A DNA stretch of 64,000 nucleotides from Mytilus californianus (taxonomy: Eukaryota), in NCBI RefSeq assembly GCF_021869535.1, contig NW_026262581.1, positions 48,546,001-48,610,000 of the forward strand, in the 5' to 3' direction. Numbering within the stretch: the first letter of the stretch is position 1; every line of letters starts with the position of its first letter. This document shows, in pieces, positions 2,341 through 60,643 of the stretch. The translations under genes and the position numbers were made by a program. Under the pieces are notes generated by a model. It saw only the letters and a program-made list of their open reading frames with translations, was not told the DNA's origin and did not search any database.

Positions 2341-2530
2341 TTTGTAAGTCAGTAAAAGTTCAATGATTAAGTTAATATTGACATTAAAAGACCTCCTCAC
2401 AAGAAGGGCTGTTCAAATCACTCGCCCTTCGGGATCTGTAGACTGCTCTAGGAACTCAACATCCCTTTTTGTTCGAAGGTCTTTTAATATCAATTTTAAC
2501 TTATCACTGAGCTTTTACAATTACTTAAAA
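2341..2530. mobile_element. MITE-like inverted-repeat element in the 3' UTR region of G1
   Basis: Arm 2352-2393 (gtaaaagttcaatgattaagttaatattgacattaaaagacc) is an imperfect reverse complement of 2478-2518. Pairing extends loosely to 2341/2530 around an ~85-bp spacer. Confidence 0.55.
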
Positions 2531-5015
2531 TAATAACTTAGTGTTCAAAGTCGGGATTTCGGTGATATCTTGTTCATCGTGTGTATCCATTAGACGGCCT
2601 TCTTCTACAAATCATATGAAAATAAACTGTTGCACAGTATTTGTTCGATGGACAATCAACATCGCGATGACAGTCTTTTTTGCAACCAATTGCTCAACTC
2701 ACTGCTGACTGAGAAATGACTCTTGAACCAGAAGTTCTTACTGATCCACTACGTCTTAACGAAACAGTGTCTAATACATCTAGCCCACTTCGTCTAGAGG
2801 TAATTGCGTCAAGAATATCCTAACCTGTATGACCAGATATTGCATGGCTACTACCTATAGTTTTCAAATAAATGAATTGCAAGATAGGTCTAAATTTCTA
2901 GCCAGACCGGATGAACCAATTCTGCTGCCAGAGGATGAATGACCATCATTACTTGAACCTCTGGGCAAGCCAGATGATGAACTTCTAATTATTTCTGAGA
3001 CTGTGTTTCCCCTTCTTATAAAGTCTGACAATCCAGATGCACCAATTCTACTTCCAGAAGAAATGTCGACGCAGTAACTTCTACAACCATCATGGACACA
3101 TTTATGGCCTGAACGACATAATTTATATCCTCCGCACCCATAATGACAATTACTGATACTGTCATCGTCAGATATAGCACGGGACATACCAGCTGAAGAA
3201 CCTCTAATGATTTCAGATACAGAGTTCCTGCCTCCAACAGAACCCCCAGACAATACTCTACTGGCTGATGACCCATGTGTTATAAATTCATTGCCTATTC
3301 CATGGGATGTTCCAACAGCTCTTGATCCTGTTCGTCTATTTGCATTAATTACATCCAGTAAAGAAAGAGATCCGCCACGACGCCCGTTTATGTCTCTTCC
3401 AACTGTGTTTCCGACCTGTAAATCCTTCTCCACTGCGTGTACATCTAATGCATGCTTTTTCGTGGGTGCATAGACTGTAAAATTAAATATCTGACAATTT
3501 TATAATCTTCACAAATCAAGTAAAAAAACTATACAGATGAACTACTATCTATCTATATATATAAGATTGTCTAGTATTATTGATAATAAGACAACAATCC
3601 ACCATTAACCAGATGACAATAATGTAAACAACTGCTGGAACCATACGGTTTCAGCACTGAGCGAAAGCCATACATTATAGTAAGCTATAATGGACCCACA
3701 CGATAAAATGTGAAACAATTCAAAGCACAATACCATTCGTTTTTCTATAATAATTTACAAAATATGTATATGTTGGTAATATACCTTCTTATGTACTAAT
3801 TATATAAATTAATATCTTTTTGGTGATTTGTCCACGATAAGGTGTTTAGTTCTAATCATCGCACCGAAGACATTTTTGTTAAAACAGCCTATAAATCTTG
3901 AGAAAGCAAAGCGAATATTTTCTTACCGGCTACTGCCAATGTGGTCAACGCCATCGAAAAGAAAATGGTCTGGAATCTCATCATCTCTAAGAATTCTGAA
4001 ATTTACAGGATACACATTATTTCTTACAAAAACATTTCAAACTTTAGGATTTATTGAGCTTGTAATCGAGCTATAGGTTGTGCAAAATTAAGATATTGTG
4101 TAGGGATTATACATGTGGAAGTCATTATCACGTGATTGAAAAGAAATATTGAAGTCCATAAGTTTTGATATAAAAAAAAGTATTTGATGACCGCTATTTT
4201 ATAATTCATTCTGAAAATAGAAGACTAACTAGGGAAAGAAAATTATATATCAAAAACAAACTAAAGGTGACATTGAGTCCTTAACCATCACATAAACGGT
4301 ACCAATATTCATGCACCAGAAGCGCATTTCGACAATTAAGGTCTGTTCAGTGATGCTCGAGGCATATTTGAAAAAATCCTAAATGGAATACTGCTGTTGA
4401 AGAGCTAATTAAACCAAACAGAACTTGAAGTATAGCAAAATATGCAGAGCGAATCAGAGCAATATATCATGAAATATAAAACACAATGTGAGATTTGGTT
4501 AAAACTACAAATCAGAAAGCTATGTTAGATATTGATTTACAATTTAACAAATGAGGAAAAAGGGATTGAAGCTAATTGTTAATCTCGAACTTGCATCACT
4601 TACATCGATTTTCAAATCTAAGTATAAATAATCATTCAATTTTACAGCAAATAATATTTAGAAACGCACATTACTTTGTATGTATATCATTTTCAATGTT
4701 TCAAATAATTATTTCAGGCGGATTTGCAATTCCGATTTATAAAAAAAAAGCTTTGTTGCCAATAAATATTACTTTGAAGCAGTATTTCTTACCCTTTACT
4801 TATTTAAATCAGTACACAAATGTATAACAATGCACAACGCTTAAATCTTAATAAATCCTATTTCTAATTCCTTAATGTTAATGATTTATTTCCTGTTATC
4901 TTTTCACAATTGCATTATTATTGCTTTGTATATATATCATATTTATTTATGATAAATATTTATGTTAAATAATTTCTTACCTTTGATTGAAGCAATTGGG
5001 AAGATTTCTTATTAA

Positions 5016-5289
5016 ATAAACTCATCATAGATACCAGGATTGAAATTTTGTATTTGCGCCAGACGCGCGTTTCGTCTACAAAATACTCATCAGTGACGCT
5101 CGAATAAAAAAAAGTTAAAAAGGCCAAATAAAGTACGAAGTTGAAGAGCATTGAGGACATAAAATTCATAAAAGTTTTGCCAAATACAGCTAAAGTAATC
5201 TATTGTTTGAGGTAGAAAAGCCATAGTATTTCAAAAATGTAAAGTTTTGTAAACAGTTAATTTATAATTATGACCATATCAATTAATTA
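5016..5289 (-). mobile_element. Retrozyme-like non-autonomous retroelement (family A) with 7-bp TSD
   Basis: 274 bp flanked by TTATTAA at 5009-5015 and 5290-5296. It is absent from exon 1 of G2-G6 and carries a hammerhead motif. Related, mostly degenerate or truncated pieces lie near 7128, 9969, 11405-11522, 16395, 29215, 39475, 45125 and 58875. Several share the end ctggtatctatgatgagtttat. Confidence 0.8.
5057..5098 (-). ncRNA. Minimal type I hammerhead ribozyme
   Basis: Minus strand: CGUCA CUGAUGA GUAU-UUUGU-AGAC GAAA C-GCGC-GUC^UGGCG. Both core boxes are intact. Stem I is CGUCA/UGGCG, stem II has one A.G mismatch, and stem III is short with a palindromic GCGC loop. Predicted cleavage is between 5062 and 5061. 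Confidence 0.82.
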
Positions 5290-5322
5290 TTATTAATATT
5301 GTTTTACTGCTTCAGAATCGTT

Positions 5323-5330
5323 CTTTTATA
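5323..5330 (-). promoter_or_regulatory. TATA box of G1
   Basis: TATAAAAG at the same position as in G2-G6, 30 nt upstream of the inferred TSS (~5300). Confidence 0.7.
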
Positions 5331-6684
5331 CAGTTTTTAATTATTTGTTTATAATTGACATGTATACAAGGAAATTTGTAACTGAACCGCAAATGATAAA
5401 TTCGTTAATTATTGTTGAAACTTTAAATGTCACGATGTCGTAGTACAACAACATTGCAGATTATGCCTATCTAAAGAAATGTATTAAGGGTCAATAAACA
5501 CATTTTGTTTCCTCCTACACTAGACATAATATTCATGACATCATAATACATTTTTATATTATGAAAAATTGCCTCCACGGATAAGATGTTTTTAATTAAA
5601 TGCATTTGGTAGTCGCCACAGACTTGTAAAGTTTAAAAAAAAACTCTAGTCTTTTATTTCCTTATAAAAGATATAGTTTGTTTAGAATTGTCAAGAAATC
5701 TCTGTTTGAAAGTTAATTCACCTGACGATAGAAAAGTTATAAGGATTTTAATCTGAAGCGGATGACTCGCCATTTGTCTGTATAAGATTCACTAGTCATG
5801 ATCGAATCTAAACAGTAGAATGGGCAAATAAATAAAGAATTTAAAGATAAACCAAAAGCTCAAAATTAGTTGGGTCAAGATGTGCAATTCAGTTTAGGTA
5901 GGCAACAATGGTTACCTTTTTTTCTTTCCTCTGTCCATATCGTAAACCTGGATATGTATGATTGCTCTTTTAAAAGCTGAGACATTTTCACTTATGTGGT
6001 TAATTCTTTAGTGTACGAAGTGGGAATAATGTTTTCACAAATTGGAAAACCCAGAAAGGCCCCATGTTATTCGTCTTCATCATGTAAAAAGTTCCTATTT
6101 GCACATAGCAAAATTCTTTGGAAATTCAGTTCGTTTCAAATATTTTAAAATAACTCCAAAGTGTTCACATCTTTATTATACAGTCATCGGCTCTTCAATA
6201 AAGCATAAATGTTTCAGCTTACAAAAAATATCCAATATCATTCAATACAGCTTTTCCATTTCTCTTTATAATTGAGTTCTTCAGTTTGAGGCGCATTAGT
6301 GATATTGCCCCAGTTGCGTCAAGTCTGGCGAATGCCATATTTGTCTTGTGATAGAAAACAGTATGCGGTATGGGTTTTGTCCAAGGCAGTACGGTGACCT
6401 ATAATTGTTAACCTTTATGTCATTTTGTCTAGTGGAAAGCTGTCTCATTGGCAATCATACCACATATTTTTTTTTTTAAATCAAAACCAAACTGTCTTTA
6501 ACCTAAAATTATTGAGAGCTTGATATATCATGTGGGGATATGTCTATTGTCGAAGACTAGATGTTACCTTAATTATGTCTTTTGGTTTTTGTTGTCGTTG
6601 GATTGCTATCTCAACATTAAACCCAAAAATATACGTCAAAAAAATACGTCACTTTTTATGGCGTTGATACATTGTTGCGTTTAT

Positions 6685-7031: not shown

Positions 7032-8689
7032 CGAGGTGCATTCACATCTCCTTTTATGGTTAACTTTATCACTCAGGTTTTTATTTCTATCAAGGTCTTA
7101 ATTCTAATAACAAATTTGTTTTTTCCAAAGATACCAGCTTATGATTTGGTACGCTAGACGCGCGCTTCCTCTAAATAACACTCATCTGTAGCGCTCGAAA
7201 TCAAAACAGCTGAAAGATCAGATCAAATACGAAGTTGAAGAGCATTAAACGTTTAAATCGTTTTTCACAAGAATCATTGTAAAATAATGATTTAAACAAA
7301 AGTTTAACATTGAAATGAACTTACGAAAAACTTCTCTATCAGCTACAACTGATGAGCATTATTATTACGAGAATGATGTAAAAAAACATATTTAATACCG
7401 ACAATCACTTCACTTTCTTTTCTTTACATTGAGAACTGACATGAAACAACAAACTTTGTCTATTGTCTGTATACAAAAAATAAAAATATAGTTGGTGTAC
7501 AACACATACTCAAAATCTGATAGGTTTTATAAAAAACAGGTATATTCCTTTGTTGATAAAATCGCAATGATAAGAACAGATTCTTTTATAAATCTATATA
7601 TTATATCAGTAAACACCATAGGCTTATGTTGGTGGTGTGTCACTACTCTGGGATGGAAGGTTGACAATAGTGAAACTTAAATCATCAATTTGTTTCAAAG
7701 ATTTTAATTTTCAGTGTTTATACGGATATTTTAGTCTTTGTTTGCCACCTTGATTTTATTTTCTTAACCAATATAATCGATTTGACCATCTGTGAAAGAG
7801 ATGAAAAAGATACCAAAGGGATATTCAAACTCATAAGTCGAAGAAAAACTGACAATTTCATGGAAAAATACGGAAAACGACTAAAAGGCAATATAGAATT
7901 TTTAAAAATTAATGCCAGTTTCAATTATAATTCTGTCATTCGCATATATCTTTCAATTCCTTTTATTATTACGTTGTACACAATCATGACAATGTCATCG
8001 CCACAAATTGTTATTGGGGGAATATCTGATGTCGCACGATGTCATAAGGTTTCTGATTTTCTAATTATGATAAGCAATTAGGCTAAATAAAGTGTCGTAA
8101 ATCAATCAAAAAATTGCGCATCGTTAAAAGTTAGTGATCTTCCTTATGAAATAACAGTATTGTTTATCTGTATTCTTCTTTAAATATATTGATATATTTG
8201 GGGAAATTTCTTATTTTGGGGCACTAAGAGTTCTTAAGAAATAGTTGGTTGGCACATCCAGTTTTTGGGACTGCATATTCAAATAAACATTACTTAGAAT
8301 TCATTTAAAGCAGATTGCTAGTTTATCTTTGACGAAATCTACTAAATTGTTCTAATTAATAAATCTTGAGTTAAGGTTGATGCTATTAGGAATAGCTACA
8401 CAATTAATGGAAAAGTACCTAGACCAGTAGGGTGAGATGTCACTAGTTATCCTCTTTTTTTTCGTACAAATTCCCTAAATTTGTGTGCTGAGTTTCAAAA
8501 GATATAAAAATATAATCAATGAAGAAATGTGAATCGAAACGGGGAATGTGTCTACAGAGACAGCAACCTTACCAAAGATGTTGTTGTTTATTCGTCAATA
8601 CTTTAACATCTCCTGACATGGATTTAAGCAATCGTAGAAATGGAGACAAAAATTGTTGGGAAGGCTATGTCGGACATTTCACATGAATT

Positions 8690-10260
8690 AAACGATTTGG
8701 AATTTCAACCAAAGAACAAGAACGGGGTCTTCCTTCACTGTATTGGATACCTAAACTACAATAATGTCCTTACAAATAACATTGCTGAGTTTTCCAGGTG
8801 CTCCACGAAACCTCTTTCTAAATTATTAAAATCAACAATTAAAGCTAGGCTTCAAAGTTATTGTGAAACCACTGATGTCAGAGCTGTCGTGAATCAGACG
8901 TGGATACTAACATTTTTTGAAAAAATGGCAAAAGATACCAAAGGTACATTCAAACTCATAAGTCGAAAACAATCTGACAATGCCATGGCATAAACGAAAG
9001 ACGACGAAATGGCATACAACAGTACAAAAACAACCACATGACAAAAATTGAAGACTGAACAACATGAACCCTACAGAAAACTCGGGGTGATCTCTGGTGC
9101 CCCGGAAGGTCAATCAGATCCTGATCTACATGTGGCACCCTTCTATTGCTCATTTAAATACATCCCCGATGATAAATCTAATTTAGTATCGATGTTCTCC
9201 CAAAATGTCGGTATTTGCCTGTATATTGAAGAGACGGATATGTGTTGGCGTTCCAAAAATTGAGTTGTGTTTTCAATGTTTAAGCAACAAATCTGTGTAA
9301 ACGTTATATATTCCGTAGAACACATAGTTGCTACAGGCGCAGCAAAGTTTGACTGTCCCTCTGGTATCTTTCGTCCCTCTTTTTATAAAATATCATTCTC
9401 ATTTCAAGCTTTTTAAGATAGAATTTGTATATTTCCTTTTAGATGAATATCATATGAAGTGTACGGGTAATGTAAGGTATTAATTAAATTGAAAACCCAT
9501 CTTAAAGAAATAATCAACCATGCTTTCCTCCATAAAAATTGTACTATACGCTATAAATTAATTGTTTAGAGATATAATTTGGCATATTTTGTTAAAAATA
9601 ATCCCGAAAAAAAAACATGCTTCATCGAAGAACGAGTTTCTCATTGAGAACACATGTGTCCAGCAGGTTGTCTACATTCCTATTTTAACCAACTGCGAAA
9701 CTCATATGTGATTTTGATATGAATCAGAGTTCCTTTAAACACTGGGAAAAAACAAGAAGATCAAAGAAGCTAGATTATTTAGTTTGACATACAGGTTAAT
9801 AGATGATGTTCTTTCCATTAACAAATAAAATTTTTCCGATTAAGTCCCATAAATATGTCCTCCTGAACTAAAGATTAAAAAAAAAACATATACAGCTTTC
9901 CGTCCCATTTCTAGACCTGTACCTCAAATTGAATTATATCGGTCATATCAATACCAGAATCGATGACAATAAACTTATCATAGATACCAGGATTACATTT
10001 TTGTAAGCCAGACAACCGAGACGATTTTAATTTTGAAATTATAAATTTTTCTCATCTTAGCAGCGATATACCAACTTCGCCAGCGTATGGAGTATACATT
10101 TCTCAACTAGTACGATATTCAAGAAACCTGCAGTTGATACTCGGACTTTGCAAAATGTCATCGTTGGCTGGGCAAATTGATGGGCATGGGTTTTGTCAAA
10201 AAACATCACATCCTTTTTCTCAAAATGTTCATAGGAAAGTGCCAAGACATAACAGATGAA
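8690..10260 (+). mobile_element. Decayed Penelope-like element reverse transcriptase
   Basis: Frame-broken RT motifs occur in order: LPSLYWIPKL (~8730), CSTKPLSKLL, VNQxWIL, LKEIINHAF, EFLIEN, RLIDDVLSIN (~9795, YIDD equivalent) and RDDFNFEIINFSHLSSDIPTSPAYGVYISQLVRYSR (~10017-10125). It is interrupted by other repeats at ~8912-9385 and a short family A piece at ~9969-10015. Confidence 0.8.
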
Positions 10261-13340: not shown

Positions 13341-14934
13341 CTCTTGAAATTCTGAAATTTAAAGGATAAAAATCATTTCTAAGAAAAAAAAAACTTCACA
13401 CATTTAATCTTAATACGAATCAGTAGATAGCAAAATAGTGCTTGCTTTTACTATACACCTGCAAGACAGTTAAATTTTGTAAACAATACTCATCGAGGCT
13501 TATATTACTTTGGGGGATATAAAATTTCATACTGAGCCAAAATGTAGATTGTATTGTAACTGGTTATTCAAACATGAGGTATTGTGTAAGGATTATACCC
13601 GAAGAAGGCATGTGAATAAAAAAATGTCTGAAAGTCGATAGAATATTGAAATGAATATTTAAAGACAACAATATATAATGCATTTTGAAACTAGAAAACA
13701 AAGTAAGAAAATATGGAAAGGATGTCTATATTTCGGCCGTTTTTATCTTTTCTAAGGGATATCTTCGAAATAAGAAAAGAGAAAACTAAACCGAATGTGG
13801 ACAATGTGTCCTTAATAAAAGCACGAATGGCACCAATACCGATGCACCAGATGCGCATGTTGACAATTAATGTCTCTTAAGTGATAATCGATGCAAAAAT
13901 ATTTCAGAATAAAAAATGTTAAACTAGCTTTGAAATGCTGAATAAAAAAGAAACTAAAGTATAGCCAAATCTTGGGGAAGGAAGCAGAGCAATAAATCGT
14001 AAAAATCAAGCTTTAATCTTAACACTATTTGATTTTTCAAGCTTCAATTTTTAACACTATTTGATATTTCAGAGAGATTAGGTTGAAATTACAATATAGA
14101 AAGATATGTTAGATATCGATCCGCAAATTAACAAATAAAGAAAAGGGGATTGAAGCAAAATATAAATCTCGAACTTGCATAACATTCATTGATTGTCAAG
14201 TTTAGTATGAAATAGACATTTACTTTTTACAGTATTTAAACTTCAGAAAGGAACATAACTTTGTATATTTATTCCGATAGACTTAAAAACACAGCAGCGA
14301 AAATCAGTTGTGCTAATAAATAATACTTTGATGCAGTACTTTGTTACTGTATCGTACACTAAATTACTTAGATCAATACAAAAATTTTGAACTATGCACA
14401 ACGCTTTAGCCTTTATAAATCATTTATCTTAAATCTTTTTGTGTCATTCTTTGTAAGAATCATCCAATTTTGAAAAAAATAAAAACATGGCAGAAAAAAA
14501 CCCACCGACTTAACCATTCTATTTTGAAGTTACCCTCATCCTGAGTTAGAAATGGTAGATCTTTAATTTCTGCGTGTCTGGTAAGTCAAGAAATTTCTAA
14601 ATAACTTTTGGTTAGAATGATAGTAAAATACGGACTTAGCTCCACTTAATTGTTAATTTCTAGTGCATTTCAATCAATTTATATCTTGAATTATCAAAAT
14701 TGGAAAAGGAAAAGAATGTTATATTTGTGCACCATTATACATTTTGAACATGAATTAATGTCAACTTGAGTGGGTTTTTGTTTGTCATGTTTTCACCACT
14801 GCCCGATTCTTAGGCAGATTGGCACTTAAAATGACTTATTTCTTGTCTTTGTTACTATTGAATTATTTATGTTTTGTATATTTATCATATTTATTTATAA
14901 TAATAGCTATGATTAAGCTTCGATAATTTCTTAC

Positions 14935-28800: not shown

Positions 28801-31800
28801 GTTCCAATTAATACATCTTTGATTCAAAGTTTGATGTAATTGGGAACAGTATAAAACCAAGTTAAGGTATTCAAGACAAACAGGTTGACAAGTCATGAAC
28901 TGGTTTCTATTTGTTATCCTTATTTTCCCATACACATTCCACTTAACTTATGTGTTGATTTAGCTATACGTCGAATCTTATTTACCAAAATAATAATCAT
29001 GTGATATCGCTTTGATCATTCATAGCATTGGGAACAGGTATTGTACGGAAAGCTGAATTAGGTTCTAATATTAATTAAACCGTCTGAGAAGTAATTTACA
29101 GATAGCAGCTATCTCAAGTGTTGCGTTTAAAAGACATGGCTTAAAAGAAAGCGGGGTTTCAGTTTGAAATATACTTCACTGTGTAAATTTTGGAAGAACA
29201 ATCATAGTGATTTTGCACACCAGACGCGTGTTTCGTTTGTAAGAGACTCATTGGTATCGTTCAAACATTTGGACAAACTCAATACAAAGTTAGAGAGCTT
29301 TATATAACAAAGAGTTTGAATGTTTGTGCCAAATACGGTTAAGACAATCTATACCCGCTATTAGAAAGCCCTAAGTGTTTCGAATATTTGGCTGATAATA
29401 CCCTCGGGGAAGAAAATTCCACCAGCAGTGGCATCGACCCAGTGGTTGTAAAAACTCATCAAAGATAGAAAGATTGTAAATTTGTTAGCAAGACCTGCAT
29501 TTTGTTTGCAAAGACTCACGTTTCCATCAGGAATTTCGACAACAAAAATTCAGAGAAGGCAACTAATTATTATCATATAACAAGTACTCAGAAATGGCAA
29601 AGTATTATGAATGAGAAAAATTATGATTTCGAACTGATGAAAATTCAGAAATCATTGTGAGGTTTTTATCAATGCAAATAATGCCACTGAGTGAGTATCG
29701 CAATAATATAAACTCGAACTCTTATATCTGATACATAGATATGTTTTAAGATTTTTCTAAAACTACAATAATTAATTTTGCATTTTGTCCGTTTTTAAAA
29801 TATTGCAATAACAAATGCACGCAATTATTTCTGAATTTACAGTATTCTATGGTTTTTTTCAACCCTGTGCAATACCAAATGTTTGTTTGTGTGTGGCCTT
29901 ATAAACATTTTATTTTTCCATGTATATTTATGACACAGATCGCACGGAATCGGTATATAGTTCTGATTTTACTACCACTTACGTTGTAATGCTAAAAGCT
30001 ACTTCAGGTAAAATACATGTCCCCTAGTAGATAACACACATTCCAGCGCTTGTTATTCAAACCATGATTTCCTTGATAGAGGACATGACTGAACAAGAAA
30101 GTTAATAAACTTAATGATAAGATTTACAGACTCAATCATGACTTGATTGACATCGTCCTGAAGATCATAGATGAGTTCGTATACGAGATACAATGGCATC
30201 CTTGTTCATAGCTTGTCACCAAAAACTACGATAAATGGAAATTTACTCTAAAAACACGACGACTGATCTCAACAAAGTTGTGTACTACTTAAGGAGAAGG
30301 AGATGCGTACCCTTTCTTGGGCATTTGTGTTCCTCCTTAAACTAGATAGGTTAAATTGTTTGCCTCTCTGTGCAATTTCTTGTTTATAAAGTGTTATTTT
30401 AAGTTTTGGTAGTGAACATTGTTTGTTTTGTTTGTATCCATTTCATTGTTTGACTCGTCGGGTCTCTATTTCTTCGTCATTGATACTTTTTGAAGTAATC
30501 TTACTTGTCATCTGTCGTTTATTTGAGTGTTAAGACCCTTTCGAGTTTGTTGGTATTTGTTGGCCAGGAATTTAAGAATGGAAAATACAAATTTCATTTC
30601 CGCTTGTTTAAAATATGTATTGTTGTTCTCCATCAACACAAATTCTTATTTTGATATCAATAAAACTGCTTAATGATTGAATTTTTTTCTTGAATATCTC
30701 ATCATTAAATCTGATTTCATTTTCTACAGCGAAACAGAACCAGAAAAGTCTCTTATACCACATAAATATAGAAGCACAGATAAACAGGGAAGTGTTATTT
30801 TTATTGTCATGCTTTAAAAGACTAGCTGTATGTTTGCTTACAAATGTAATATTGATACTCTGAAATTTCCATAAAAAAATGATTTCGGGTGATGTAAGGT
30901 AGTTATCAAATATGGAACCTCGAAGAGTGCTTCAGGAACCTTTTTACCTGTCTATCAAAAATAAAAATAAGAATGTTGTGGCATGATTGTCAATGAGACA
31001 ACTCTCCATCAGAGACGTAATGATATAGAAGTTGACAACTATAGGTCACCAAACGACCTTCAACAATGATCAAAACCCATACGGCATAGTAAGCTATAAA
31101 TAATTCATATGTATCGTTAAATTTTAAGGACCGACCATATAAATGTACATTTAAGAACAAAATGGTGGGTTGAACCTCACTTAGAGATATTAAGAAATAT
31201 TTTGAACTGGAATTTTCAAACAATATAATTTATTTCAGGCCGAATTAGGGTTTATCTTGGTAAAATTGTTATTCAAATGGTTCCAATCAATTCATCTTTG
31301 ATTAAACAAATAAACATGATATTGCTTGAGGTAAACTATTTTCGCAATTAAAATATTTTCTTAAACTTCATTCTATGACATTATTCTGGTTTCATGTATA
31401 CCTATTTTTATAACAAAGACTATTTGGCTACACTCGAAAAGGTCTTAACAATCAACCTTTCATCGTTGTCCTTAGGTGAATGATATTCTTCTTGAAATTA
31501 CGTATAATGTACTTTCAGTTCGTGCATTTTCTGAAAGCCAACACATTGCCCACTCTTTGTTAGGTAGGCAAAGACAGAAATAATGGTAATGGTCACTTTT
31601 AAAAAACAAATTTGAAACATTGACTTTTCGCTAAGCACTCACTCACAAAATAACAAATTGGTGTTTGTAACCATTGTTGATGTCTACATCGATCACTGTT
31701 GAACTTCTATAATGTAACCACGGTCTGCACTGCAATTGTGCCAAAAAAGGACTTTTTTGAAAAAAAGTTGATATCCACCGCAAATCAAACGTAAAAACAC

Positions 31801-31899
31801 AATAGATGATAACTAAAACTACTTCAAAAAGTATCAAAGACGAAAAAATACAGACATGCCGAGTCAAACAATGAAATGGATATAAACAAAACAACCAAT

Positions 31900-32895
31900 A
31901 GATATAAGAATATGTGATATGAGTGCCAATGGGACAACTCTCCATCCAAGCCACAATTTGTAAAAGTAAACCATTATAGGTCAAAGTACGGCCTTCAACA
32001 GGCAGCCTTGGCTCACACCGAACAGCAAGCTATAAATGGCCCCCAAAATGACTAGTGTAAAACCATTCAAACAGGAAAAACTACGGTCTAATCTATAGAA
32101 AAAACGAGAAACACTTATGAACAATCTCAACAAACGACAACCACTGAACATCAGGTTCCTGACTTAGGACAGGTGCAAATAAATGCAGCGGGTTTAAACG
32201 ATTTAATAGGCGCCAACCTTCACCCTACCTAAAACAATAGTGTACCATCACAACATAGAAAGACACACTATAAAATATCAATTGAAATGGCTTAACTCAA
32301 TCAAAAGACATATTAACAAAACAAGTGAACATACACTGAACGAATAAATTTGATCTATGACACAATGTAAATACAAAATTAATAAAACAAGGGAGTTAGA
32401 TGTTTAACAATATCAGAAAGACAATCATAACCTTGGACAAAATGCCGCCAAATAAAATAACGTACACAGGTAAAAAAAAGAAGACATGACTTTTGCAATG
32501 CCAAAATAAAACTATCGACCGGCAGTAGGATAGTTAGGAGTTAACCTGTTAATACATATGTATAATGTATTATATAGATAGAGTAATCTCTATATAGAAA
32601 ATGAAAATGAAAATAGGATGTGAAATACCGTTTTTAATAAGTTTTCTACAGGTACAGCCAATTCTTTGTATCTATGAAAGAATTTAGTAAAAGTTTTAAG
32701 CAATGTATGGTAACGAAATCCCTGACTTAATAATTTACCAATGATGCATTGATTACGTTCGTTAAAATCTATAACAACACTACACACACGGGCATAACGA
32801 ACGAGTTGGGATATATAAACACCGTATGATGGAGCCAAAGAAACATCGCCGTCTAAAAAGGAAAAATTAACAATAGTGAATGAAAAATCGTCTAT
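31900..32895 (-). mobile_element. 5'-truncated Penelope-like element: RT C-terminus plus family C 3' tail
   Basis: The minus strand encodes DDFSFTIVNFSFLDGDVSLAPSYGVYISQLVRYARVCS...KLLSQGFRYH (about 32895-32590). It continues into the family C sequence ending at ~31900. Confidence 0.8.
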
Positions 32896-34558: not shown

Positions 34559-35747
34559 CTCAAAGAATTCTGAAATTAACAGTATAAACGTTATTTCTTT
34601 TAAAATCATAATTGACACATTGAATACGAATCAGTTAATAAAATATTACATGTTTTACTATAGATCTGCTAGAAAACAATCTGCAGCGATATCTTTACTT
34701 GTTTGGGGTATACAAAAATGACAGAATGTCTTTATTCTAAGCCAAACTTAACGATTGATTGTGTTTGCTACGAGCAACAGGTTGTTCAAAATCGAGATAT
34801 TGTTAAGTATTATATCTGAAAAAAGGCATTATGATGTTAATTTTTAAAAAAATCACTGTTGTAAGAATTTTGAAATTAAGGATTTAAAGACAGCTCTTCT
34901 AAAATTAATTCTGAAATTTGAACAATCACTAGGAAAAGACGGAAAGGGAGGAGGGGGGGGGGGGGGGGGAGGGCTTTATTTGACTGTAATGGTTTTACAC
35001 GGATATCTTTGAAAATTAAAACAGGAACAAACAATCTCAATGTGGACATTTGCTTCTCAGAAATAACATAAATACATTCAATATTTATAAACCAGATGCG
35101 CGTTTCGCCATTTAATGTATCTTCCGTGATACTCAAGGCCAAACTTTTTCAAAATACAAAATTGAAGAGCTGATCATACAAAAGAAATAATAGAGTATAG
35201 CAAATTCTAGAAAAAGAATTGGAGCAATTAATCATGTAATATAAGATTTCAATTGATAATACACTATGAGATTTGGTTGATATTACAAATCAGAAAATTA
35301 TGATAGAAATTAATTCATGAATAAACAAATGAGGAAAAAGGAATTGAAGCAAAATATCAATCTTGAACTTGATTTACTTAAATTGATTTTCAATATCTCA
35401 AAAATATTTCAGTCGGGTTTTCACTTCCGATAGGTTCTAAAACGCAGTAAAAATAATTTGTGTCAATAAAATATACTTTGAAGCAGTATTTTGTTAAAAA
35501 TCGTGTCTCTTACTTTTCAATTACAGAAATTTGAAACAATTTCAGTATATCATTCTTTATAAAAGTAAACTAAATTGTTTCTTTCTTTCAAAGGAGCAAA
35601 TGTTTCATTGGAAGTATAGAATTATCTGTACGCTTTAAATTTAATAAATCATGATTTTATAATGACTTGTTTTCTGCTATCTTTATCACTGTTGTATTTT
35701 TGGTTGGTTTTATTCATAATTGAAAGTTAGTTACCCATAAGCCTTAC

Positions 35748-38156: not shown

Positions 38157-40087
38157 GTTGGTTATTGACGGTAACACGACACATTTTCGTAACATTTTAA
38201 TCGATCTTCAAATTACGAATAAAACCAACAAAAAAGGGTGAGTAAAAGACAACGCACATACTATATCAAACCAGGTACTTAGAAACAAAGACAATACTTA
38301 AACAAGAAACGAAAAGAGAGTAAAAAATTGAAACATTTCAGCAGTACAATTTACGAAAAATAAAGTAATATTGAAGTCATATCATACTCTGCATGCCAAA
38401 CTGGTTATTGAGATGTACAGAAATTACAGTTGCGATTGATCTGTTTTGGATTTTGTATGATCTAGGATAACCTTTGATATGTGGTATGGGTTTTGCTCAT
38501 TGTTGAAGACCAAACAGGGACCTATAGTTGTTAACCTCCACGTTATTTGGTGTCTGGTAGAGAGTTGTCTCATTGGCAATCATACCCCATCTTCTTACTT
38601 TTTTTCAGCATATATGTATTATCTATCTGCTTGAACTCTGTAAGTTACTGCATCAAAAACAAATTCTAACCACATTGACTTAATGCGTAAAAAAGTGTAA
38701 CAAAAATAAAACCGAACTCGAAGGTGAATTCAAAAAGGATGTCTATAAATCTTTTTAAATCAAACGTAATAAACAAACGGAACGAATAAAAGCAACTGTC
38801 GTATTCATATTCCTGACTAAATGCAGGCTTTTCCGAAGAATATGGTGGAATAAACCTGGTTTTATAGCTAGGCAAACACCTGTTTAAAGTGAGGCACTTA
38901 GAGGTATCAAGATATATTTGGAACTTTCAATACTATAATTCATTCCAGGCAGAATTTTGGTTTATCTTGGTAAAATATCAAATGGTTCCGATTAATACAT
39001 CTTTGATTTAAAGGTTGATGTAAATGGGAACAGAAGCAAAATTATATAAAAAGGAACTCAGGAAAAACAGGTTGAAAGTCATGAGCTGGTCTCTATTTGT
39101 TATTCTTTTTTCCCACAAAAAAATGAAATTCCCCTTAATTTATGTGTTGAGTTAGCTATTCGTCGGTGACTAATACGGCGATTCTTATTTATTAAAATCA
39201 TCAGTCATCTGACTTTGGTTTGACCATTCATAGCATTGGAAACAGATATTGAAGGAAAAGCTGAGCTTATATGTATTAAACGGTTTTATAGATAGCAGTT
39301 TGCTTAAGTGTTGCGTTTGAAAAGATATGGCTTAAAGGAAACCGATGCTTTAGTTTAAAAATATTACACTGTGTAAATTAGGTACAGGCATTTAAACATG
39401 TTATCTGATATATCGTTTTTTTTTTTACAAAAATGACGTAAAAACCCGAAAAATATACCAGCATAGTGATTTTGCACACCAGACGCGTGTTTCGTCTGAA
39501 ACAGTTGACCAAACTAAATACGAAATTGAAGAGCTTTATATACTAAAGATTTCGAATGTCTGTGCCAAATTAAGACCATCTATACCCACTGGTAGAATAT
39601 TTGGCTGATAATACCCTCGGGGAAGAAAAGTTCACCAGCAGTAGCATCGACCCAGTGGTTGTAAAAACTCATCAAAGATACAAAGATTGTAAATTTGTAA
39701 GTCAGACGTGCATTTTGTTTGCAAAGACTCACGTTCCCATCAGGTATTTCGACAACAAAAATTAAGAAGAGGCAACTAAACATTATCATAATTCAAGTAC
39801 TTAGAAATGGCAAAGTATTATGAATAGGAAAAAGTATGATTTCGAACTACTAAAAATTCAGAAATTATTACGGGGTTTTTATCAATGCGAATAATGCGAC
39901 TGGGTGATTATCGCAATAATAAGAACTCGCACTTACATATCTGATACATATATATATGTTTTTCTAAAAAAAACCGCAATAATTATTTTCGCCTTTTGTC
40001 CATTTTTTAAATATCGCATTAATAAATGCACGCAATAATTTCTGAATTTGCAGTATTCTATGATTATTTTTAACCCTGTGCAGTACC

Positions 40088-41589: not shown

Positions 41590-43213
41590 TCATCGTGTGT
41601 ATCCATTAGACGGCCTTCTTCGACAAATCATGTGACAATTAACAGTTGCACAGTATTTGTTCGTTGGACAATCTCCATCACGATGACACTCTTTTTTGCA
41701 ACCAATTGATCCACTTACTACTGACTGAGAAACGACCCCTGAACCAGAAGTACGTACTGATCCACCACGTCTTAATGAAACTGTGTCTAATACATCAAGT
41801 CCACTTCGTCTAAGGTTGGTTGCGTCAAGAATATCAGAACCTGCATGACCAGATATTCCACGACTTCTACCTATTGTTTCCAAATGAGAATTGCTAGATA
41901 GGCCCAAATCCCTGGCCAGACCAGATGAACCAATTCTGCTGCCAGAGGATAAATGACCATCATTACTCGAAACTCTGGTCAAGCCAGATGACAAACTTCT
42001 AATTATTTTCCTTCTTATAGAATCCGACAATCCAGATGCACCAATTATACTTCCAGAAGAAATTTCGACGCAGTAGCTGCTACAACCATTGTGAATACAT
42101 TTATGTCCTGAACGACATAATTTATCTCCTCCACACCCATAATGACAGTTACTGATACTGTCATCGTCAGATAAAGCACGTGAAATACCAGCTGAGGAGC
42201 CTCTAATAATTTCAGTTACAGATGTCCTGCCTCCAATAGAACCCCCAGACAATCCTCTACTAGCTGATGACCCGCGTGATAAAAAGTCATTGCCTATTCC
42301 ATGAGATGTTCCAACTGCTCTTGATCCTGCTCGTCTGTTTGCATCAATTACATCCAGTACAGAAAGAGATCCAACACCACTACGCCCGTTTATGTCTCTC
42401 CCAACTGTGTTTTCGACCTGTAAAATCTTCTTCGCTCCATGTTTGTCTAATGCATGCTTTTCTGTTGGTGAATAGGCTGTAAGAATAAACATAGAATAGT
42501 TTTTACAATATTCACAAATCAAGTAATAAAAAATACAATACAGGTGAATTACTATCTGCATATGAATATCAGGATATATGTAGTTATTGCAAATAAGACA
42601 ACTATTCACCATACACCAAAGGATGGTGTAAACTTGTAAAACCTTCTTCACTCCATTTATATCTAATGCATGCTTTTCAATGGGTACATAGACTGTAAAA
42701 TTAAATATCTCACAATTTATATAATCTTTATCAATCAAGTAATACCATTAACAATACAGGTTAACTAACATTTATATATTTATATAAGGATACTTGGTAT
42801 AATTGTCAAAAAGACAATTATCCACCATAGACCAAAAGGCGAGGTTGTAAACAGTTGCAGGTACCGTTCGGTTTCAGCACTGAGCAAAACCCATACCTTA
42901 TCGTTATCTATTAAAAGACCCCCATGATAAAATTAGAAACAATTCAAAACACAAAACCATTTGTTTCAAATTTGTTTCATTATAATTTACAGAATATGCA
43001 GATGTTGGTAATATGCCTTCATATAATTATGTACGAAAGTTATCTATGTTTAAGAAGATTTCGGCGATAAGAAATTTAGATTTTATCTACACATTGATAA
43101 AACTTTGTTAAACAGCTTATAAATTTTGAAATGGCAAATCAAATATCTTTCTTACCGGCTACTGTCATTGTGGTCAATGCCATCAACAAGAATATGGTCT
43201 GGAACCTCATCAT
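41590..43213 (-). CDS. G5: same family, chimeric copy (~314 aa via the proximal acceptor, ~386 aa via the distal one)
   Basis: Coding exon 2 is 43213-43156 (MMRFQTIFLLMALTTMTVA). Exon 3 starts at 42476 or 42692, both after ttacag and in frame, and runs to TGA 41590-41592. AATAAA at 41523-41528. Confidence 0.85.
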
Positions 43214-44166
43214 TTCAAAGAATTCTGAAATTAACAGGATAACATCATTTCTATGAAAATAAAAATTCACACATTTAATTTTAATACGAATCATTTAATA
43301 GTAAAACTGTGTTTGATTTTTCTATACATTTGCAAGACAGTAAAATTTTAAAAACTATACTTTTCGAGGCTAATATTTTCTTTGGGAGGTATATAAAATG
43401 ACAGAAGGATGATACATGAAGAAGGCATGTGACTTAAGATAAATCTGAAAGTCGATAGAATTTTGAAATGAACATTTGAAGACAGCCTTTATTAAATGCA
43501 CTCTAAAAATAGAAAATAGAAAACAATTTGAGAAACGAAGGGAAGGTGCCTATATTTCGACCGTTATGATATTTTCTAAGGGATATCTTCGAAATAAGAA
43601 AACAGAATACCAAACTGAATGTGAAGAGTGTGTCCTACATGTAAATAAAATTATAAGAGGTACCAGTATTCATGCAACAGATGCGTATGTCGACTATTAA
43701 TGTCTTATTAGTGTTTCTCGAAGCAATATTTCAATATTCAAAGTGTTATACTGGGGTTGAAGAGCTAAATAAAAAGGAAATCAATTTACAGACAAATCTG
43801 GGGAAAAATTCAGAGCAATAAATCGTATAAATCAAGCTTCAATCTATACCACAACTTTATTTTTCAGAGAGATTAGGTTGATATTACAAAATAGAAAGAT
43901 ATATAAGTTATCGATTCACGAATTAACATTCAAAGAAAAGGGGATCGAAGCAAATTATTCATCTCGAACTTGCATAACATTCATTGATTGTCAAGTCTTA
44001 GTATGAAATAGACATTTACTTTTTACAGTATTTAAACCCTACAGACTGGAACATAACTTCGTATATTTATTATTGCTTATCTATCAAACAGTTATTTCAG
44101 TCAGATTATCTATTCCGATAGATTCTAAAACAGAGAAAATCTGTTTAATATTTAATAATTTCTTAC

Positions 44167-53437: not shown

Positions 53438-54648
53438 TTATCGTGTGTATCCATTAGACGGCCTTCTTCGACAAATCATGTGACAATTAACAGTTGCACA
53501 GTATTTGTTGGTTGGACAATCTCCATCCGCAAGACACTCTTTTTTGCAACCAATTGCTCCAGTTACTACTGACTGAGAAACGACCCCTGAACCAGAAGTA
53601 CGTACTGATCCACCACGTCTTAAAGAAACTGTGTCTAATACATCAAGTCCACTTCGTCTAAGGTTGGTTGCGTCAAGAACATCAGAACCTGCATGACCAG
53701 ACATTCCACGACGTCTACCTATTGTTTCCAAATGATCATTGCTAGATAGTTCCAAATCCCTAGCCAGACCAGATGAACCAATTCTGCTGCCAGAGGATAA
53801 ATGACCATCATTACTTGAAACTCTGGTGAAACCAGATGATAAACTTCTAATTATTTCCCTTCTTATAGAGTCGGACAATCCAGATGCACCAATTATACTT
53901 CCAGAAGAAATTTCGACGCAGTAGCTGCTACATCCATTGTGAATACATTTATGTCCTGAACGACACAATTTATCTCCTCCACACCCATAATGACAGTTAC
54001 TGATACTCTCATCGTCAGAGAAAGCACGTGACATACCAGCTGAGGAGCCTCTTATGATTTCAGATACTGATGTCCTGCCTCCAACAGAACCCCCAGATAA
54101 TCTTCTACTGCCGGATGACCCACGTGTTATGAATTCGTTTCCTATTCCATGAGATGTTCCAACTGCTCCTGATCCTGCTCGTCTATTTGCATCAATAAGA
54201 TCTAGTACTGAAAGAGATCCGCTGCCACGACGCCCGTTTATAGCTCTTCCAGATGTATTTTCGACCTGTAAAATCTTCTTCACTCCATGAATGTCTACTG
54301 CATGCTTTTCTGTTGGTGAGTATGCTATAAGATTAAACATAGAATAATTTTTACAATCTTCACAGTACAAGTAATACAAAATACAATACAGGTTAACTAC
54401 TATCTTTATATCATTTTACTTTTACATTGTAATTCACAAAAAAATTGTAAATGTTGGTAATAATATTTCTTATGTACTTTAGTTATATATATTTTTTTTA
54501 ATTTTCTGCAGTAAGGTATTTATCTCAACATCGAAAATACTTTCGTTAAAACAGCCTATAAATCTCGAAAAAAAAGTAGCATTTTCTTACCGGCTACTAT
54601 CATTGTGGTCACTGCCATCGATAAGAAAATGGTCTGGAATCTCATCAT
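53438..54648 (-). CDS. G6: same family (~314 aa)
   Basis: Coding exon 2 is 54648-54591 (MMRFQTIFLSMAVTTMIVA). Exon 3 is 54324-53438 (acceptor ttatag, TAA stop). AATAAA at 53380-53385. Confidence 0.88.
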
Positions 54649-55835
54649 CTCTAAGAATTCTGAAATTAACAGGATGAACGTTGTTTCTCAGAAAATCATA
54701 ATTGACCTATTAAATACGAATCAGTTAACACAATCTTTATATTCATATTTACATGTTTTTACTATACATCTGCTAGAAACAATCTGCAGCGATATTTATA
54801 CATGTTTTGGGTATACAAAAATGACAGAATATCTTTATTCGAAGCCGAATTGTAGGATTTATTGTGCTTGCTTTCGAGCTATAAATTGTTCAAAATTGGA
54901 ATATTGTGTAAGGTTATATCTGGAAAAGCCGTTGTTATGTTAATTACAAAAACCTCACTGTCGTCAAAACTTTGAAATTTACTGATTGAAAACAGCTTTT
55001 ATAAAATTTATTCTGAAAATAGAAGACTCAATAGAAAAATATGGAAGGGGGTCTATATCTCGACTTTTATTGTTTAAAAACGGATATCTTTGAAAATTAA
55101 AACCGAAACAACAAACTCAATATGGACATTGTGACCTAAATATTTACAAGTCAGATGATCGATTCGACAATTAATGGATGTTCTGTGATTTTCAAGCCAA
55201 ACATATTTGAAAATCCACGATTTAATACCGGCCACGATGAGCTGATCATACAAAAAAAAATAGAGTATAACAACTTCTAGACAAGGAATTGGAGCAATTA
55301 ATCCTAAAATATAAATTTCAATTTATTATACAATATTAGACTCGGTTGACTTTAAAAGTTTGAAAAATATGATAAAAATAGTTTTACCAGTTAACAAATT
55401 TAAAAAGAAAAGGAATGAGGCAAAATATAAATCTCGAACTTCTATCACTTAAATTGATTTTCAATATCTCAAAAAATTAATTTGGTCTGGTTTTCATTTT
55501 CGATAGATTTTAAAAGGCAGTAAAAATAAGATGTGTTGCTAAAATATAGTTTGAAGCATTTTATGGTTATAATACTTTTTTCTTACTATTCTATTACAGA
55601 AATGTAAACAATGCACAACTTTCACTATACTATTCTTTATAAAAGTAAATTGAACTGTTTCGTTCTGCCAAGGGAGCAAATGCTTCTCTAGAAGTATCGA
55701 ATTATCCTAATGCTTTAAACTTAATAAATTCTAATTCTATAATGATTTATTTCCTACTATCTTTGTCACTATTGTATTATTGTTTTGTTTATTTATCATA
55801 TTTATTCATAATTAATTGTTACCTATAAGCCTTAC

Positions 55836-58900: not shown

Positions 58901-59945
58901 GCAAGAGACTCATCGGTATCGCTCAAACATTTGACAAAACTAAATACGCAGTTCAAGAGCTTTTTATACTAAATATTTTGAATGTTTGTGCCAAATTATG
59001 GCCATCTATACCCGCTGGTAGAAAGCCCTAAGTGTTTCGAATATTTGGCTGATAATACCTTCGGGGAAGAAAAGTCCACCAGCATTTGCATCGACCCAGT
59101 GGCTGTAAAAACTCATCAAAGATACAAAGATTGTAAACTTGTAAGCAAGACGTGCATTTTGTTTGCAAAGACTCACTTTCCCATCAGGCATTTCGACAAA
59201 AACAATTAAGAAGAGGCAACTAAACATTATCATATTACAAGTACTTAGAAATGGAAAAGTATTATGAATAGGAAAAATTATGATTTCGAACTACTAAAAA
59301 ATCAGGAATTATTACGAGGTTTTTATCAATGCGAATAATGAGACTGGGTGATTATCGCAATAATAAGAACTCGCACTTATATATCTGATACATATATATG
59401 TTTTTCTAAAAAACGCAATAATTATTTTCGCATTTTGTCCATTTTTCAAATATCGCATTAATAAATGCACGCAATAATTTATGGATTTGCAGTGATCTAA
59501 GGATGTTTTTAACCATGTGCAGTACCAAATGTATGTTTTAGTGTGGCCTTACAAACTTTATGACACAGATGTAGTGCACACGAAATTAGTATATTGTTTT
59601 GATTGTACTACCACTTAAGTTGTAAAGCTAAAAGCTGCTTCGGGTAAAGAATTGTTCGTCTCTCTGTGCAATTTCTTGTTTATAAAGTGCTATTTTAATT
59701 TTTTGTTTTTGAACATTGTTTGTTTTGTTTGTATCCATTTCATTGATTGCCTCGGCATGTCTGTATTTCTTCGTTTTTGATACCTTTTCCTGTCATCTAT
59801 CGTATTGTTACGTTTGATTGGCCGTGGATATAAAAAAAGTCCTTCTTGACACATTTACGGTGCAGGCCGTTGTTACATTCTGAAAAGTTTAAAAGTGATC
59901 GATGTACACAACAACAATGGTTAAACACATCAATTTGTTATGTTT

Positions 59946-60643
59946 TAAATAAAGGCAACAGTAGTATACCGCTGTTCGAAATTCATAAATCGATCGAGAA
60001 AAAAACAAATCCGGGTTACAAACTAAAATTGAGGGAAACACATCAAATATAAGAGAACTACGAAACAACAGAAACACAACATTAAAATGTAACACACACA
60101 GAAACAAACTATAATATAACAATGGCCATTTTCCTGACTTGGTACAGGACATTTTAAGAAAAAAATTGTGGGTTGAACCTGGTTTTGTGGCTAGCCAAAC
60201 CTCCCGCTTTTATGGCAATGTTAAATATAACATTAAAATGACAACATAACATGACAGGCCTACAATACAAATAAAGGAAGAACATATAGGACAGAGAAAC
60301 ATACGAATAATAGCTAACAAAAGGTACCAGGTTAAAAATTTAATACGCAAGACGCGCGTTTCGTCCACACAAGACTAACCAGTGACGCTCAGATCAAAAA
60401 GTTCGAAAGCCAAAACAAGTACAAAGTTGAAGAGCATTGAGGACTAAAAGTTCCAAAAAGTAGTGCCAAATACGGTTAAGGTTATATGTCTGGAATAAGA
60501 AAAACCTTAGTATTTAGAATAATTCATACATTTGCAAACAATAAATTTATAAAAATGACTATATAATAGATATACATGATAACACCGAAGTCGTGACTAA
60601 CTACAGAATAAAAACGGATACATAAATCAACATAAACCAGCAC
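59946..60643 (-). mobile_element. Long family B element with a core-mutated hammerhead motif
   Basis: It has the same 3' end as the 7031 and 21711 copies, in reverse. A hammerhead-shaped motif lies at 60346-60387. The paralogous site near 51925 is empty. Confidence 0.72.

What the first reader, a model, noticed from the sequence alone, without database searches (positions are those of the whole stretch)
5009..5330. Sense hammerhead retrozyme inserted at the transcription start of the one full-length pseudogene
Seen: a 274-bp TSD-flanked element sits ~4-10 nt after the inferred TSS, inside exon 1 of G1 only. It carries the only hammerhead I found in the window with both core boxes intact, on the gene's sense strand. 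G1 also has a frameshift and a nonsense codon, while uninterrupted copies are open. Established: Penelope-associated retrozymes carry minimal type I hammerheads that cleave poorly as monomers and better as dimers. Inference: cleavage near +240 would remove the cap and silence the paralog before coding decay. Alternatively the strong TATA promoter now drives retrozyme RNA and makes this a source locus.
Basis: partly seen in the sequence, partly recalled or inferred. Interest (0 to 1): 0.8.

Follow-up and report, generated by a model that had tools for sequence, protein, structure and literature searches.

The report
Solo mussel retrozyme copy in pseudogene leader
A 271-base, 5'-shortened single copy of an already published mussel jumping element that carries a self-cutting hammerhead RNA motif sits in the untranslated first exon of a dead copy of a secreted WAP-protein gene; nothing shows that the motif cuts here or silenced the gene, so this is an ordinary insertion.

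Summary
A 271-nt element (5019-5289) lies between 9-10-bp target-site duplications in the inferred 5'UTR exon 1 of G1. Five paralogs show the empty site. Its minus (gene-sense) strand carries the only hammerhead in the window with an intact core (5056-5099, cut between 5062 and 5061). G1 has a +2 frameshift and two premature stops.

The element is not new. Its 45-nt hammerhead differs by one base from Mg353, the cloned Mytilus galloprovincialis retrozyme (Cervera & de la Peña 2020). That base is helix II C10.3 to A. The body reads colinear with Mg353 by eye. The G1 copy is a solo partial monomer lacking about 90 nt of the unit, so one hammerhead cannot release a circle.

Read depth indicates a very abundant family with many copies at least 95% alike. 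Copies share one 3' end and vary at the 5' end, as in target-primed reverse transcription.

Neither functional reading gained support. The one RNA run gave no reads on G1 or its promoter junction. All element reads came from other loci, with no pile-up of ends at the cut site. The mismatch costs about 6 kcal/mol. The insertion also adds eight upstream ATGs. It looks younger than much of G1's decay.

Earlier scan notes report retrozyme families elsewhere in this genome.

The parts
5019..5289 (-). Solo, 5'-truncated partial monomer of the Mytilus Mg353-type retrozyme family. The family-homologous part is about 5016-5283; 5284-5289 are extra letters of unclear origin.
   Evidence: Empty sites in five paralogs. 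By eye colinear with Mg353 as printed in the supplement of PMC7229834. Read loose ends mark a common 3' boundary at 5013-5015 and show that the family continues beyond 5283.
5056..5099 (-). Type I hammerhead motif, predicted cut between 5062 and 5061. Helix II carries an A10.3 x G11.3 mismatch (+ strand T5084).
   Evidence: Rfam Hammerhead_1, 29.8 bits, full model. 44 of 45 letters identical to the Mg353 hammerhead. Fold energies.
5009..5018 (.). Target-site duplication, copy on the element's 3' side in gene sense (TTATTAAATA on the + strand). It overlaps the element's own TTTATT end, so the exact boundary is uncertain by a few bases.
   Evidence: read loose ends at 5013-5015.
5290..5298 (.). 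Target-site duplication, copy on the element's 5' side in gene sense (TTATTAATA on the + strand).
5299..5330 (-). G1 core promoter: TATAAAAG at 5330-5323 and an Inr-like ACAAT with the inferred start near 5300.
   Evidence: TATAAAAG is invariant in all six aligned gene copies (G1-G5, G7); the flanking block is 82-87% identical between paralogs. The start site is inferred, with no RNA evidence.
4981..5008 (-). Rest of non-coding exon 1, ending in the conserved donor AAAG|GTAAG (last exon base 4981).
3927..3995 (-). G1 exon 2: start codon and signal peptide, intact, with splice sites conserved.
2574..3475 (-). G1 exon 3 (Ser/Gly-rich protein with WAP-type modules). It is broken by a +2 nt insertion at 2873-2872 and by stops at 2822-2820 and 2696-2694. 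One module cysteine is replaced by Phe.
   Evidence: Pfam WAP on paralog G4 at 24.3 bits, cut-off 20.8.

Best explanation
This is a dead-on-arrival copy of a known, very abundant mussel retrozyme family, the Mg353 type of Cervera & de la Peña 2020.

Inferred mechanism: an RNA of the family was reverse-transcribed at a nicked, AT-rich target. Copying started at the family's fixed 3' end (...GAUGAGUUUAUU), about 47 nt downstream of the hammerhead cut site. It stopped early, leaving a 271-nt 5'-truncated partial monomer between 9-10-bp target-site duplications. A Penelope-like element enzyme is the published candidate for this step.

The copy landed by chance at about +11 of the non-coding exon 1 of G1. 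G1 is one member of a roughly 10-kb tandem array of secreted WAP-type protein genes and was probably already free of constraint.

Shown: the insertion, its family membership, its truncation, its single hammerhead, and the absence of transcripts from this locus in one RNA run.

Inferred: the hammerhead here is weak or inactive, and the insertion has no function. If G1 were transcribed, the 280-nt longer leader with eight upstream ATGs would by itself impair translation.
For: - Empty sites in five paralogs and the target-site duplication.
- The hammerhead is 44/45 identical to the cloned Mg353 retrozyme, and the body is colinear with it by eye. About 90 nt of the unit ('segment B') are missing here and occur only in old tandem relics elsewhere in the window.
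- Summed contig depth is 4x10^5 to 1.5x10^6 over the element against about 5-30 on the flanks (X7), which points to a very large number of copies at least 95% alike.
- Read loose ends are heterogeneous at 5013-5015 (agreement 0.43-0.55), which marks a shared 3' terminus with many different flanks. They are uniform beyond 5283 (agreement 0.65-0.87), so other copies are longer at the 5' side.
- Solo copies in two unrelated metagenome contigs have the same 3' end and different 5' truncations.
- RNA run X21 gave zero reads on 2400-4952 and 5286-5700. Of 374 reads on the element, 371 continue into unlike flanks. No pile-up of read ends was reported.
- The hammerhead fold costs +14 kcal/mol against the ensemble in G1 and +7.7 with the published C10.3.
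- Eight upstream ATGs are added and the leader grows from 51 to 331 nt.
- G1-private substitutions in exon 3 are flat across codon positions (15/13/14; 42 in about 850 nt) and there are three disabling lesions. The element shows one listed near-unanimous private letter, at 5223.
Against: - Only one RNA run, of unknown tissue, was read, and only about 6% of it. I could not check whether the paralogs are expressed there, so the silence of G1 is weak evidence.
- The hammerhead core, helix I, the helix III palindrome and the GUC site are all intact. The sister sequence Mg353 cuts as a single copy in vitro, so some cleavage cannot be excluded.
- Nearest-neighbour energies also disfavour the proven Mg353-type fold, so only the 6.4 kcal/mol difference is informative.
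- The age argument rests on a truncated table (71 rows not shown) and on copies pre-filtered at 95% likeness.
- G4, an open paralog, also has flat codon-position counts (6/7/7), so flatness alone does not prove loss of constraint.
Confidence: 0.78

Rival explanations
1. The gene-sense hammerhead cuts the G1 leader at about +240, separates the cap from the coding region and so silenced G1. Coding decay followed.
For: - The orientation is gene-sense, the core is intact, and the motif lies in the 5' leader.
- The near-identical Mg353 hammerhead self-cleaves at about 0.1 per min from a one-hammerhead construct.
- Abstracts of engineering papers report ribozymes in UTRs used to lower gene expression (PMC10403566, PMC10761166, abstracts only).
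Against: - The helix II mismatch makes the fold 6.4 kcal/mol less stable.
- No G1 transcript and no ends at 5061/5062 were seen.
- The element looks much younger than G1's private decay.
- Eight upstream ATGs would impair translation without any cleavage.
- The start site and exon 1 are inferred only.
Confidence: 0.07
2. Insertional inactivation without catalysis. The insertion itself killed G1 by adding a long structured leader with upstream ATGs, by separating the start site from downstream promoter elements, or by attracting small-RNA silencing aimed at an abundant repeat.
For: - The leader grows from 51 to 331 nt with eight upstream ATGs, two in strong context.
- The insertion lies at about +11.
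- A preprint on frog genomes reports retrozymes overlapping exons in only 0.24-0.32% of cases, mostly 3'UTRs, which implies selection against such hits.
Against: - The same age argument applies: one listed private change in the element against about 4.9% neutral-looking private divergence and three lesions in exon 3.
- One of the two strong-context upstream ATGs (5224) was created by G1's own later change at 5223.
- There are no expression data.
Confidence: 0.12
3. Source locus. The TATA promoter of G1 now transcribes the element and feeds retrozyme RNA into the family's life cycle.
For: - A strong TATA box and an Inr-like motif lie directly upstream, in the right orientation.
- Family RNA is present in the RNA run, with first mates about 3:1 on the + strand. 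Depending on the library type, that could mean mostly hammerhead-sense RNA.
Against: - There is one hammerhead and about 90 nt of the unit are missing, so no unit-length RNA or circle can be released.
- Zero RNA reads lie on 5286-5396, and the reads on the element continue into other flanks.
- Other copies extend beyond 5283 with a sequence that G1 lacks.
Confidence: 0.03

Closest known systems
Mytilus galloprovincialis non-LTR retrozyme, cloned genomic repeat 'Mg353' (Cervera & de la Peña, NAR 2020, PMC7229834)
   Same: The 45-nt hammerhead is identical at 44 positions. The body is colinear from ATTGATATGG to CTATGATGAGTTTATTT, at roughly 85-88% identity by eye. It is AT-rich and non-coding, and the target-site duplication is longer than 4 bp.
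   Different: This is a solo partial monomer of about 270 nt out of about 365, not a tandem repeat. It lacks segment B. Helix II has C10.3 changed to A, and the helix I closing pair is G-C instead of G-U. It sits in a gene's first exon.
Penelope-like elements with hammerheads near their 3' ends (Cervera & de la Peña 2014; Craig et al. 2021, PMC8557442)
   Same: The hammerhead lies close to the 3' end, 5' truncation is common, and the insertion has target-site duplications.
   Different: There is no reverse transcriptase or GIY-YIG coding sequence in the element. No ORF of 110 aa or more in the window overlaps it, and the three ORFs outside the gene family that I scanned (8640-8993, 31643-31984, 54605-54943) gave no such Pfam match. 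The element is a non-autonomous relative at most. Which enzyme copied it was not tested.
Monomer derivatives of animal retrozymes (Li, Clavereau & Pollet, bioRxiv 2026, 10.64898/2026.07.22.740005)
   Same: Dispersed single units of a retrozyme family, described there as offspring that probably cannot transpose.
   Different: That survey covers vertebrates plus three insect and one coral genome, with the genomic-feature counts made in frogs. It found exon overlaps rare and mostly in 3'UTRs. Here the hit is in a 5'UTR exon, but of a pseudogene.
Self-cleaving ribozymes placed in mRNA untranslated regions (engineered tools, PMC10403566 and PMC10761166; the natural Clec2 3'UTR hammerhead, from my own knowledge)
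   Same: A self-cleaving motif in cis within a UTR could lower expression.
   Different: Cleavage is untested here, the motif carries a destabilising mismatch, and the host gene is already broken.

Membership tests
Hammerhead ribozyme, type I (Rfam RF00163) | Conserved core CUGANGA ... GAAA and a cleavable triplet (GUC) | tested here: met
   CUGAUGA, GAAAC and GUC are all present at 5056-5099 on the minus strand.
Hammerhead ribozyme, type I (Rfam RF00163) | Three helices around the core, with helix I open | tested here: inconclusive
   Helix I has 6 bp. Helix III is A-U and C-G plus a GCGC loop (palindrome). Helix II has G-C and U-A, then an A x G mismatch, then U-A. The minimum-free-energy fold is a different rod: -16.0 against -2.2 kcal/mol for the hammerhead fold.
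Hammerhead ribozyme, type I (Rfam RF00163) | Score at or above Rfam's gathering threshold (34 bits) | tested here: not met
   29.8 bits. Relatives without the mismatch also fall short, at 32.5 and 25.9 bits, so the threshold does not separate good from bad copies of this family.
Hammerhead ribozyme, type I (Rfam RF00163) | Self-cleavage | not testable with these tools
   No pile-up of read ends at 5061/5062 in RNA reads of the family. This says little, because circular or uncut RNA would show none either.
Metazoan non-LTR retrozyme (Cervera & de la Peña 2020) | Sequence homology to an experimentally shown retrozyme | tested here: met
   44/45 identity with the Mg353 hammerhead. The body is colinear by eye with the sequence printed.
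Metazoan non-LTR retrozyme (Cervera & de la Peña 2020) | Tandem repeats (two or more units), each with a hammerhead, so that a unit can be excised | tested here: not met
   There is a single partial unit with one hammerhead. Segment B is absent. This locus is a monomer derivative of the family, not a functional retrozyme.
Metazoan non-LTR retrozyme (Cervera & de la Peña 2020) | Non-coding, low GC, target-site duplication longer than 4 bp when present | tested here: met
   GC is 0.286 in the 2-kb window 4001-6000 that contains the element. The element holds only short ORFs. The target-site duplication is 9-10 bp.
Metazoan non-LTR retrozyme (Cervera & de la Peña 2020) | Expressed as linear and circular RNA | tested here: inconclusive
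   Family RNA is present, but it comes from other loci. There is none from this locus in one run, and circles cannot be judged on a truncated copy.
Autonomous Penelope-like element (5'-truncated copy) | RT and GIY-YIG coding sequence in longer copies of the same family | not tested
   About 30 nt beyond 5283 were seen in read loose ends, and they match the retrozyme unit (the end of segment B), not a coding region.

The most novel reading that the evidence does not exclude
A natural case in which a retrozyme-derived hammerhead in the 5' leader of a host mRNA cuts in cis and separates the cap from the coding region. Retrozyme monomers would then act as ready-made off-switches that can retire members of tandem gene families. 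G1 would be an example caught after the event.
Probability: 0.05. Interest if true: 0.6.

Novelty: already known. Interest (0 to 1): 0.2.

Why it matters
If the hammerhead did cut the G1 leader, this would be a natural example of gene silencing by a transposon-borne ribozyme in a 5'UTR. That is a mode known to me only from engineered constructs.

As it stands, the locus is one more copy of a published mussel retrozyme family, lying in a gene copy that was probably already dead. Its modest value is as a clean insertion, with five empty-site paralogs beside it. It shows how solo copies of this family look: a fixed 3' end about 47 nt past the hammerhead cut site, 5' truncation and a 9-10-bp target-site duplication. 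That fits target-primed copying from an uncut or circular RNA rather than from a linear monomer cut at the hammerhead.

Tried and rejected
- The Rfam gathering scan of the whole window found nothing. The motif appears only at the E-value threshold.
- I looked in the window for the family's upstream continuation seen in the reads and found none.
- The search of earlier findings by sequence, and by words for exon or promoter insertions, returned nothing.
- The first metagenome pattern scan was blank. A looser pattern gave two contigs.
- I tried to find paralogous empty sites and target-site duplications for other copies in the window (60.3k, 11.4k, 10.0k, 7.1k). The BLAST results were not clear enough to use.
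- The predicted dimer fold did not give the double-hammerhead form, and I did not pursue it.
- I did not align Mg353 formally. The sequence exists only as printed text in a supplement, so I used two short patterns and comparison by eye.
- A truncated autonomous Penelope-like element was considered. It is set aside for lack of coding sequence and because the upstream continuation matches the retrozyme unit.
- A premature polyadenylation signal in the element was considered. By eye there is no AATAAA on the gene-sense strand.

Full report

Yes. On the minus strand, 5056-5099 matches Rfam Hammerhead_1 over the whole model at 29.8 bits, E 2.2e-5 in a 551-nt search. This is below the gathering score of 34, so the whole-window scan at gathering threshold listed nothing.

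- The core boxes CUGAUGA and GAAAC are intact.
- Helix I is GCGUCA paired with UGGCGC.
- Helix III is the palindrome ACGCGCGU.
- The GUC triplet places the cut between 5062 and 5061.
- A core-pattern search found only one other, unrelated match in 64 kb.
- An alignment of about 20 related copies shows every other core decayed.

**2. Is it an insertion?**

Yes.

- G1's two flanks abut each other in five paralogs.
- TTATTAAATA (5009-5018) and TTATTAATA (5290-5298) are the duplicated target, with 271 nt between them.
- The paralog alignment shows an invariant TATAAAAG (5330-5323 in G1, minus strand).
- An Inr-like ACAGT (ACAAT in G1) follows 31 nt downstream of it.
- A conserved donor AAAG|GTAAG ends a roughly 50-nt exon 1 that has no ATG.
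- Exon 2 (3995-3927 in G1) carries the ATG and a signal peptide.
- Exon 3 encodes a Ser/Gly-rich protein with WAP-type modules. Pfam WAP scores 24.3 bits against a cut-off of 20.8.
- The element therefore sits at about +11 of an inferred non-coding first exon, in the gene's sense.
- The start site and exon 1 are inferred from conservation only. No RNA supports them.

**3. Is G1 a pseudogene?**

Yes. G1 has a +2-nt insertion at 2873-2872, stops at 2822-2820 and 2696-2694, and a lost module cysteine. G2, G3, G4, G5, G7 and G8 are open in this exon. G1's promoter motif, exon 2 and splice sites look intact.

**4. What is the element?**

The supplement of Cervera & de la Peña 2020 (PMC7229834) prints 'Rtz Genom mussel Mg353', a cloned genomic repeat of Mytilus galloprovincialis.

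- Its 45-nt hammerhead matches 5057-5101 with one mismatch, C10.3 to A in helix II.
- By eye the G1 element is colinear with Mg353 from ATTGATATGG to CTATGATGAGTTTATTT.
- Mg353 then continues with about 90 nt ('segment B') that G1 lacks.
- That segment occurs in the window only in three old, paralogous tandem relics: 29418-29448, 39631-39661 and 59075-59105.

According to the paper, about 5000 such hammerheads lie in repeats of 350-390 bp. The cloned repeat self-cleaves co-transcriptionally at about 0.1 per min. [quoted passage not shown]

The family is therefore already described. Earlier notes of this scan also call the genome a Mytilus mussel and report retrozyme families elsewhere in it. 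I treated them as leads only.

**5. What the reads add**

*Abundance.* In three DNA-type runs the flanks have summed contig depth of about 5-30, while the element bins reach 4x10^5 to 1.5x10^6 in X7. This points to a very large number of copies at least 95% alike, so the subfamily is abundant and young.

*Boundaries.* Loose ends at 5013-5015 have low agreement (0.43-0.55), meaning many different flanks and a shared 3' terminus. Loose ends beyond 5283 have high agreement (0.65-0.87). Their consensus is the reverse complement of the end of segment B plus the start of Mg353. Other copies are therefore longer, and the G1 copy is 5'-truncated.

*Independent copies.* Two unrelated metagenome contigs hold solo copies with the same 3' end and different 5' truncation points.

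*Mechanism.* A fixed 3' end, variable 5' ends and a 9-10-bp target-site duplication are what target-primed reverse transcription gives. Because that end lies about 47 nt downstream of the hammerhead cut site, the template was not a linear monomer cut at the hammerhead. It was an uncut multimer or a circle, as the published model proposes. Penelope-like elements are the published candidate source of the enzyme. I did not test that.

*Presence in other individuals.* Contigs of two other individuals cross the left junction by 23-24 nt (X3 record 15, X7 record 20). The insertion is probably present there too, although this is below the tool's 31-nt bridging rule. No empty-site joint was among the listed joints, but 98 joints were not shown.

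**6.

*RNA evidence.* The RNA run X21 (raw reads, about 6% read) gave zero reads on 2400-4952 and on 5286-5700. Of the 374 reads on the element, 371 continue into unlike sequence, so they come from other loci. No place showed a pile-up of molecule ends. G1 is thus not detectably transcribed in that sample, and nothing links its promoter to the element. The weakness is that the tissue is unknown and I could not check the paralogs.

*Fold.* The hammerhead fold of the G1 copy scores -2.2 kcal/mol against -16.0 for a competing rod. With the published C10.3 it scores -8.6. In the full 320-nt leader, forcing the hammerhead costs +15.0 kcal/mol against +7.8. The proven Mg353-type fold is disfavoured by this model too, so only the difference of 6-7 kcal/mol is informative. 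It predicts a much weaker ribozyme.

*Upstream ATGs.* The insertion lengthens the leader from 51 to 331 nt and adds eight upstream ATGs, two of them in strong context. Translation would suffer without any cleavage.

**7. Order of events**

- G1-private substitutions in exon 3 number 42 in about 850 nt (4.9%). They are flat across codon positions (15/13/14). The nearest paralog G2 shows 7/5/17.
- Within the element, the listed comparison with copies at least 95% alike shows one place where nearly all others differ from G1: 5223, with 195,582 of 195,643 depth in X7.
- If that is close to the true count of private changes (about 0.4%), the insertion is much younger than the neutral-looking history of the coding exon. 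Two stops and a frameshift would be unlikely to arise in so short a time.
- I rate 'decay first, insertion later' at roughly 70%.

Caveats:
- 71 rows of that table were hidden.
- Copies were pre-filtered at 95% likeness.
- The open paralog G4 also has flat counts (6/7/7).

**8. Source-locus reading**

A single hammerhead and a missing segment B mean that no unit-length RNA or circle can be released from this copy. No RNA read joins the promoter to the element. I consider this reading very unlikely.

**9. Verdict**

The element is a solo, 5'-truncated monomer of a published mussel retrozyme family. The silencing and source-locus mechanisms have no support and some evidence against them. This is an ordinary transposon insertion in a pseudogene, of low interest, apart from giving a clean view of the family's insertion anatomy.

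Noticed in passing
window 4310-4405, 13842-13907, 35091-35170, 43655-43765 (all minus strand): A decayed hammerhead-bearing relic of a related family lies in the gene's sense at the same place in intron 1 of G1, G2, G4 and G5. It was probably inserted before the gene array expanded.
   Followed up: partly
window 29210-29540, 39451-39753, 58847-59212 (minus strand): There are old tandem (dimer-like) retrozyme relics that include the published unit's segment B, at paralogous positions of three array units. Their hammerhead cores are decayed.
   Followed up: partly
window 60321-60564 (minus strand): This copy is 75% identical to the G1 element over about 250 nt. Its core is dead (CUGGUUA), but helix II reads GUCU.
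   Followed up: no
window 41590-42435 versus 62154-62999: Exon 3 of G5 and exon 3 of G8 are 99.5% identical, while other pairs are 86-94% identical. This points to a recent duplication of a segment spanning about 20.5 kb, or to gene conversion.
   Followed up: no
window 5222-5224: G1's one clearly private letter in the element (+ strand A5223, T in nearly all other copies) turns AAG into an upstream ATG in strong context. That ATG opens a 44-codon ORF ending at the UGA of the hammerhead's CUGAUGA box.
   Followed up: partly
window 7782-8081 and 8640-8993 (+ strand): Two ORFs share a motif (KDTKG-FKLISR-K-DN), which suggests another repeated element of unknown kind. Pfam gave nothing significant for the second ORF.
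   Followed up: no
L001 2538-2716 and L002 2597-2714 (ENA metagenome assemblies ERZ887851, ERZ887849): Contigs in public metagenome assemblies carry copies of this mussel retrozyme family, so they probably derive from bivalve host DNA in the samples.
   Followed up: no
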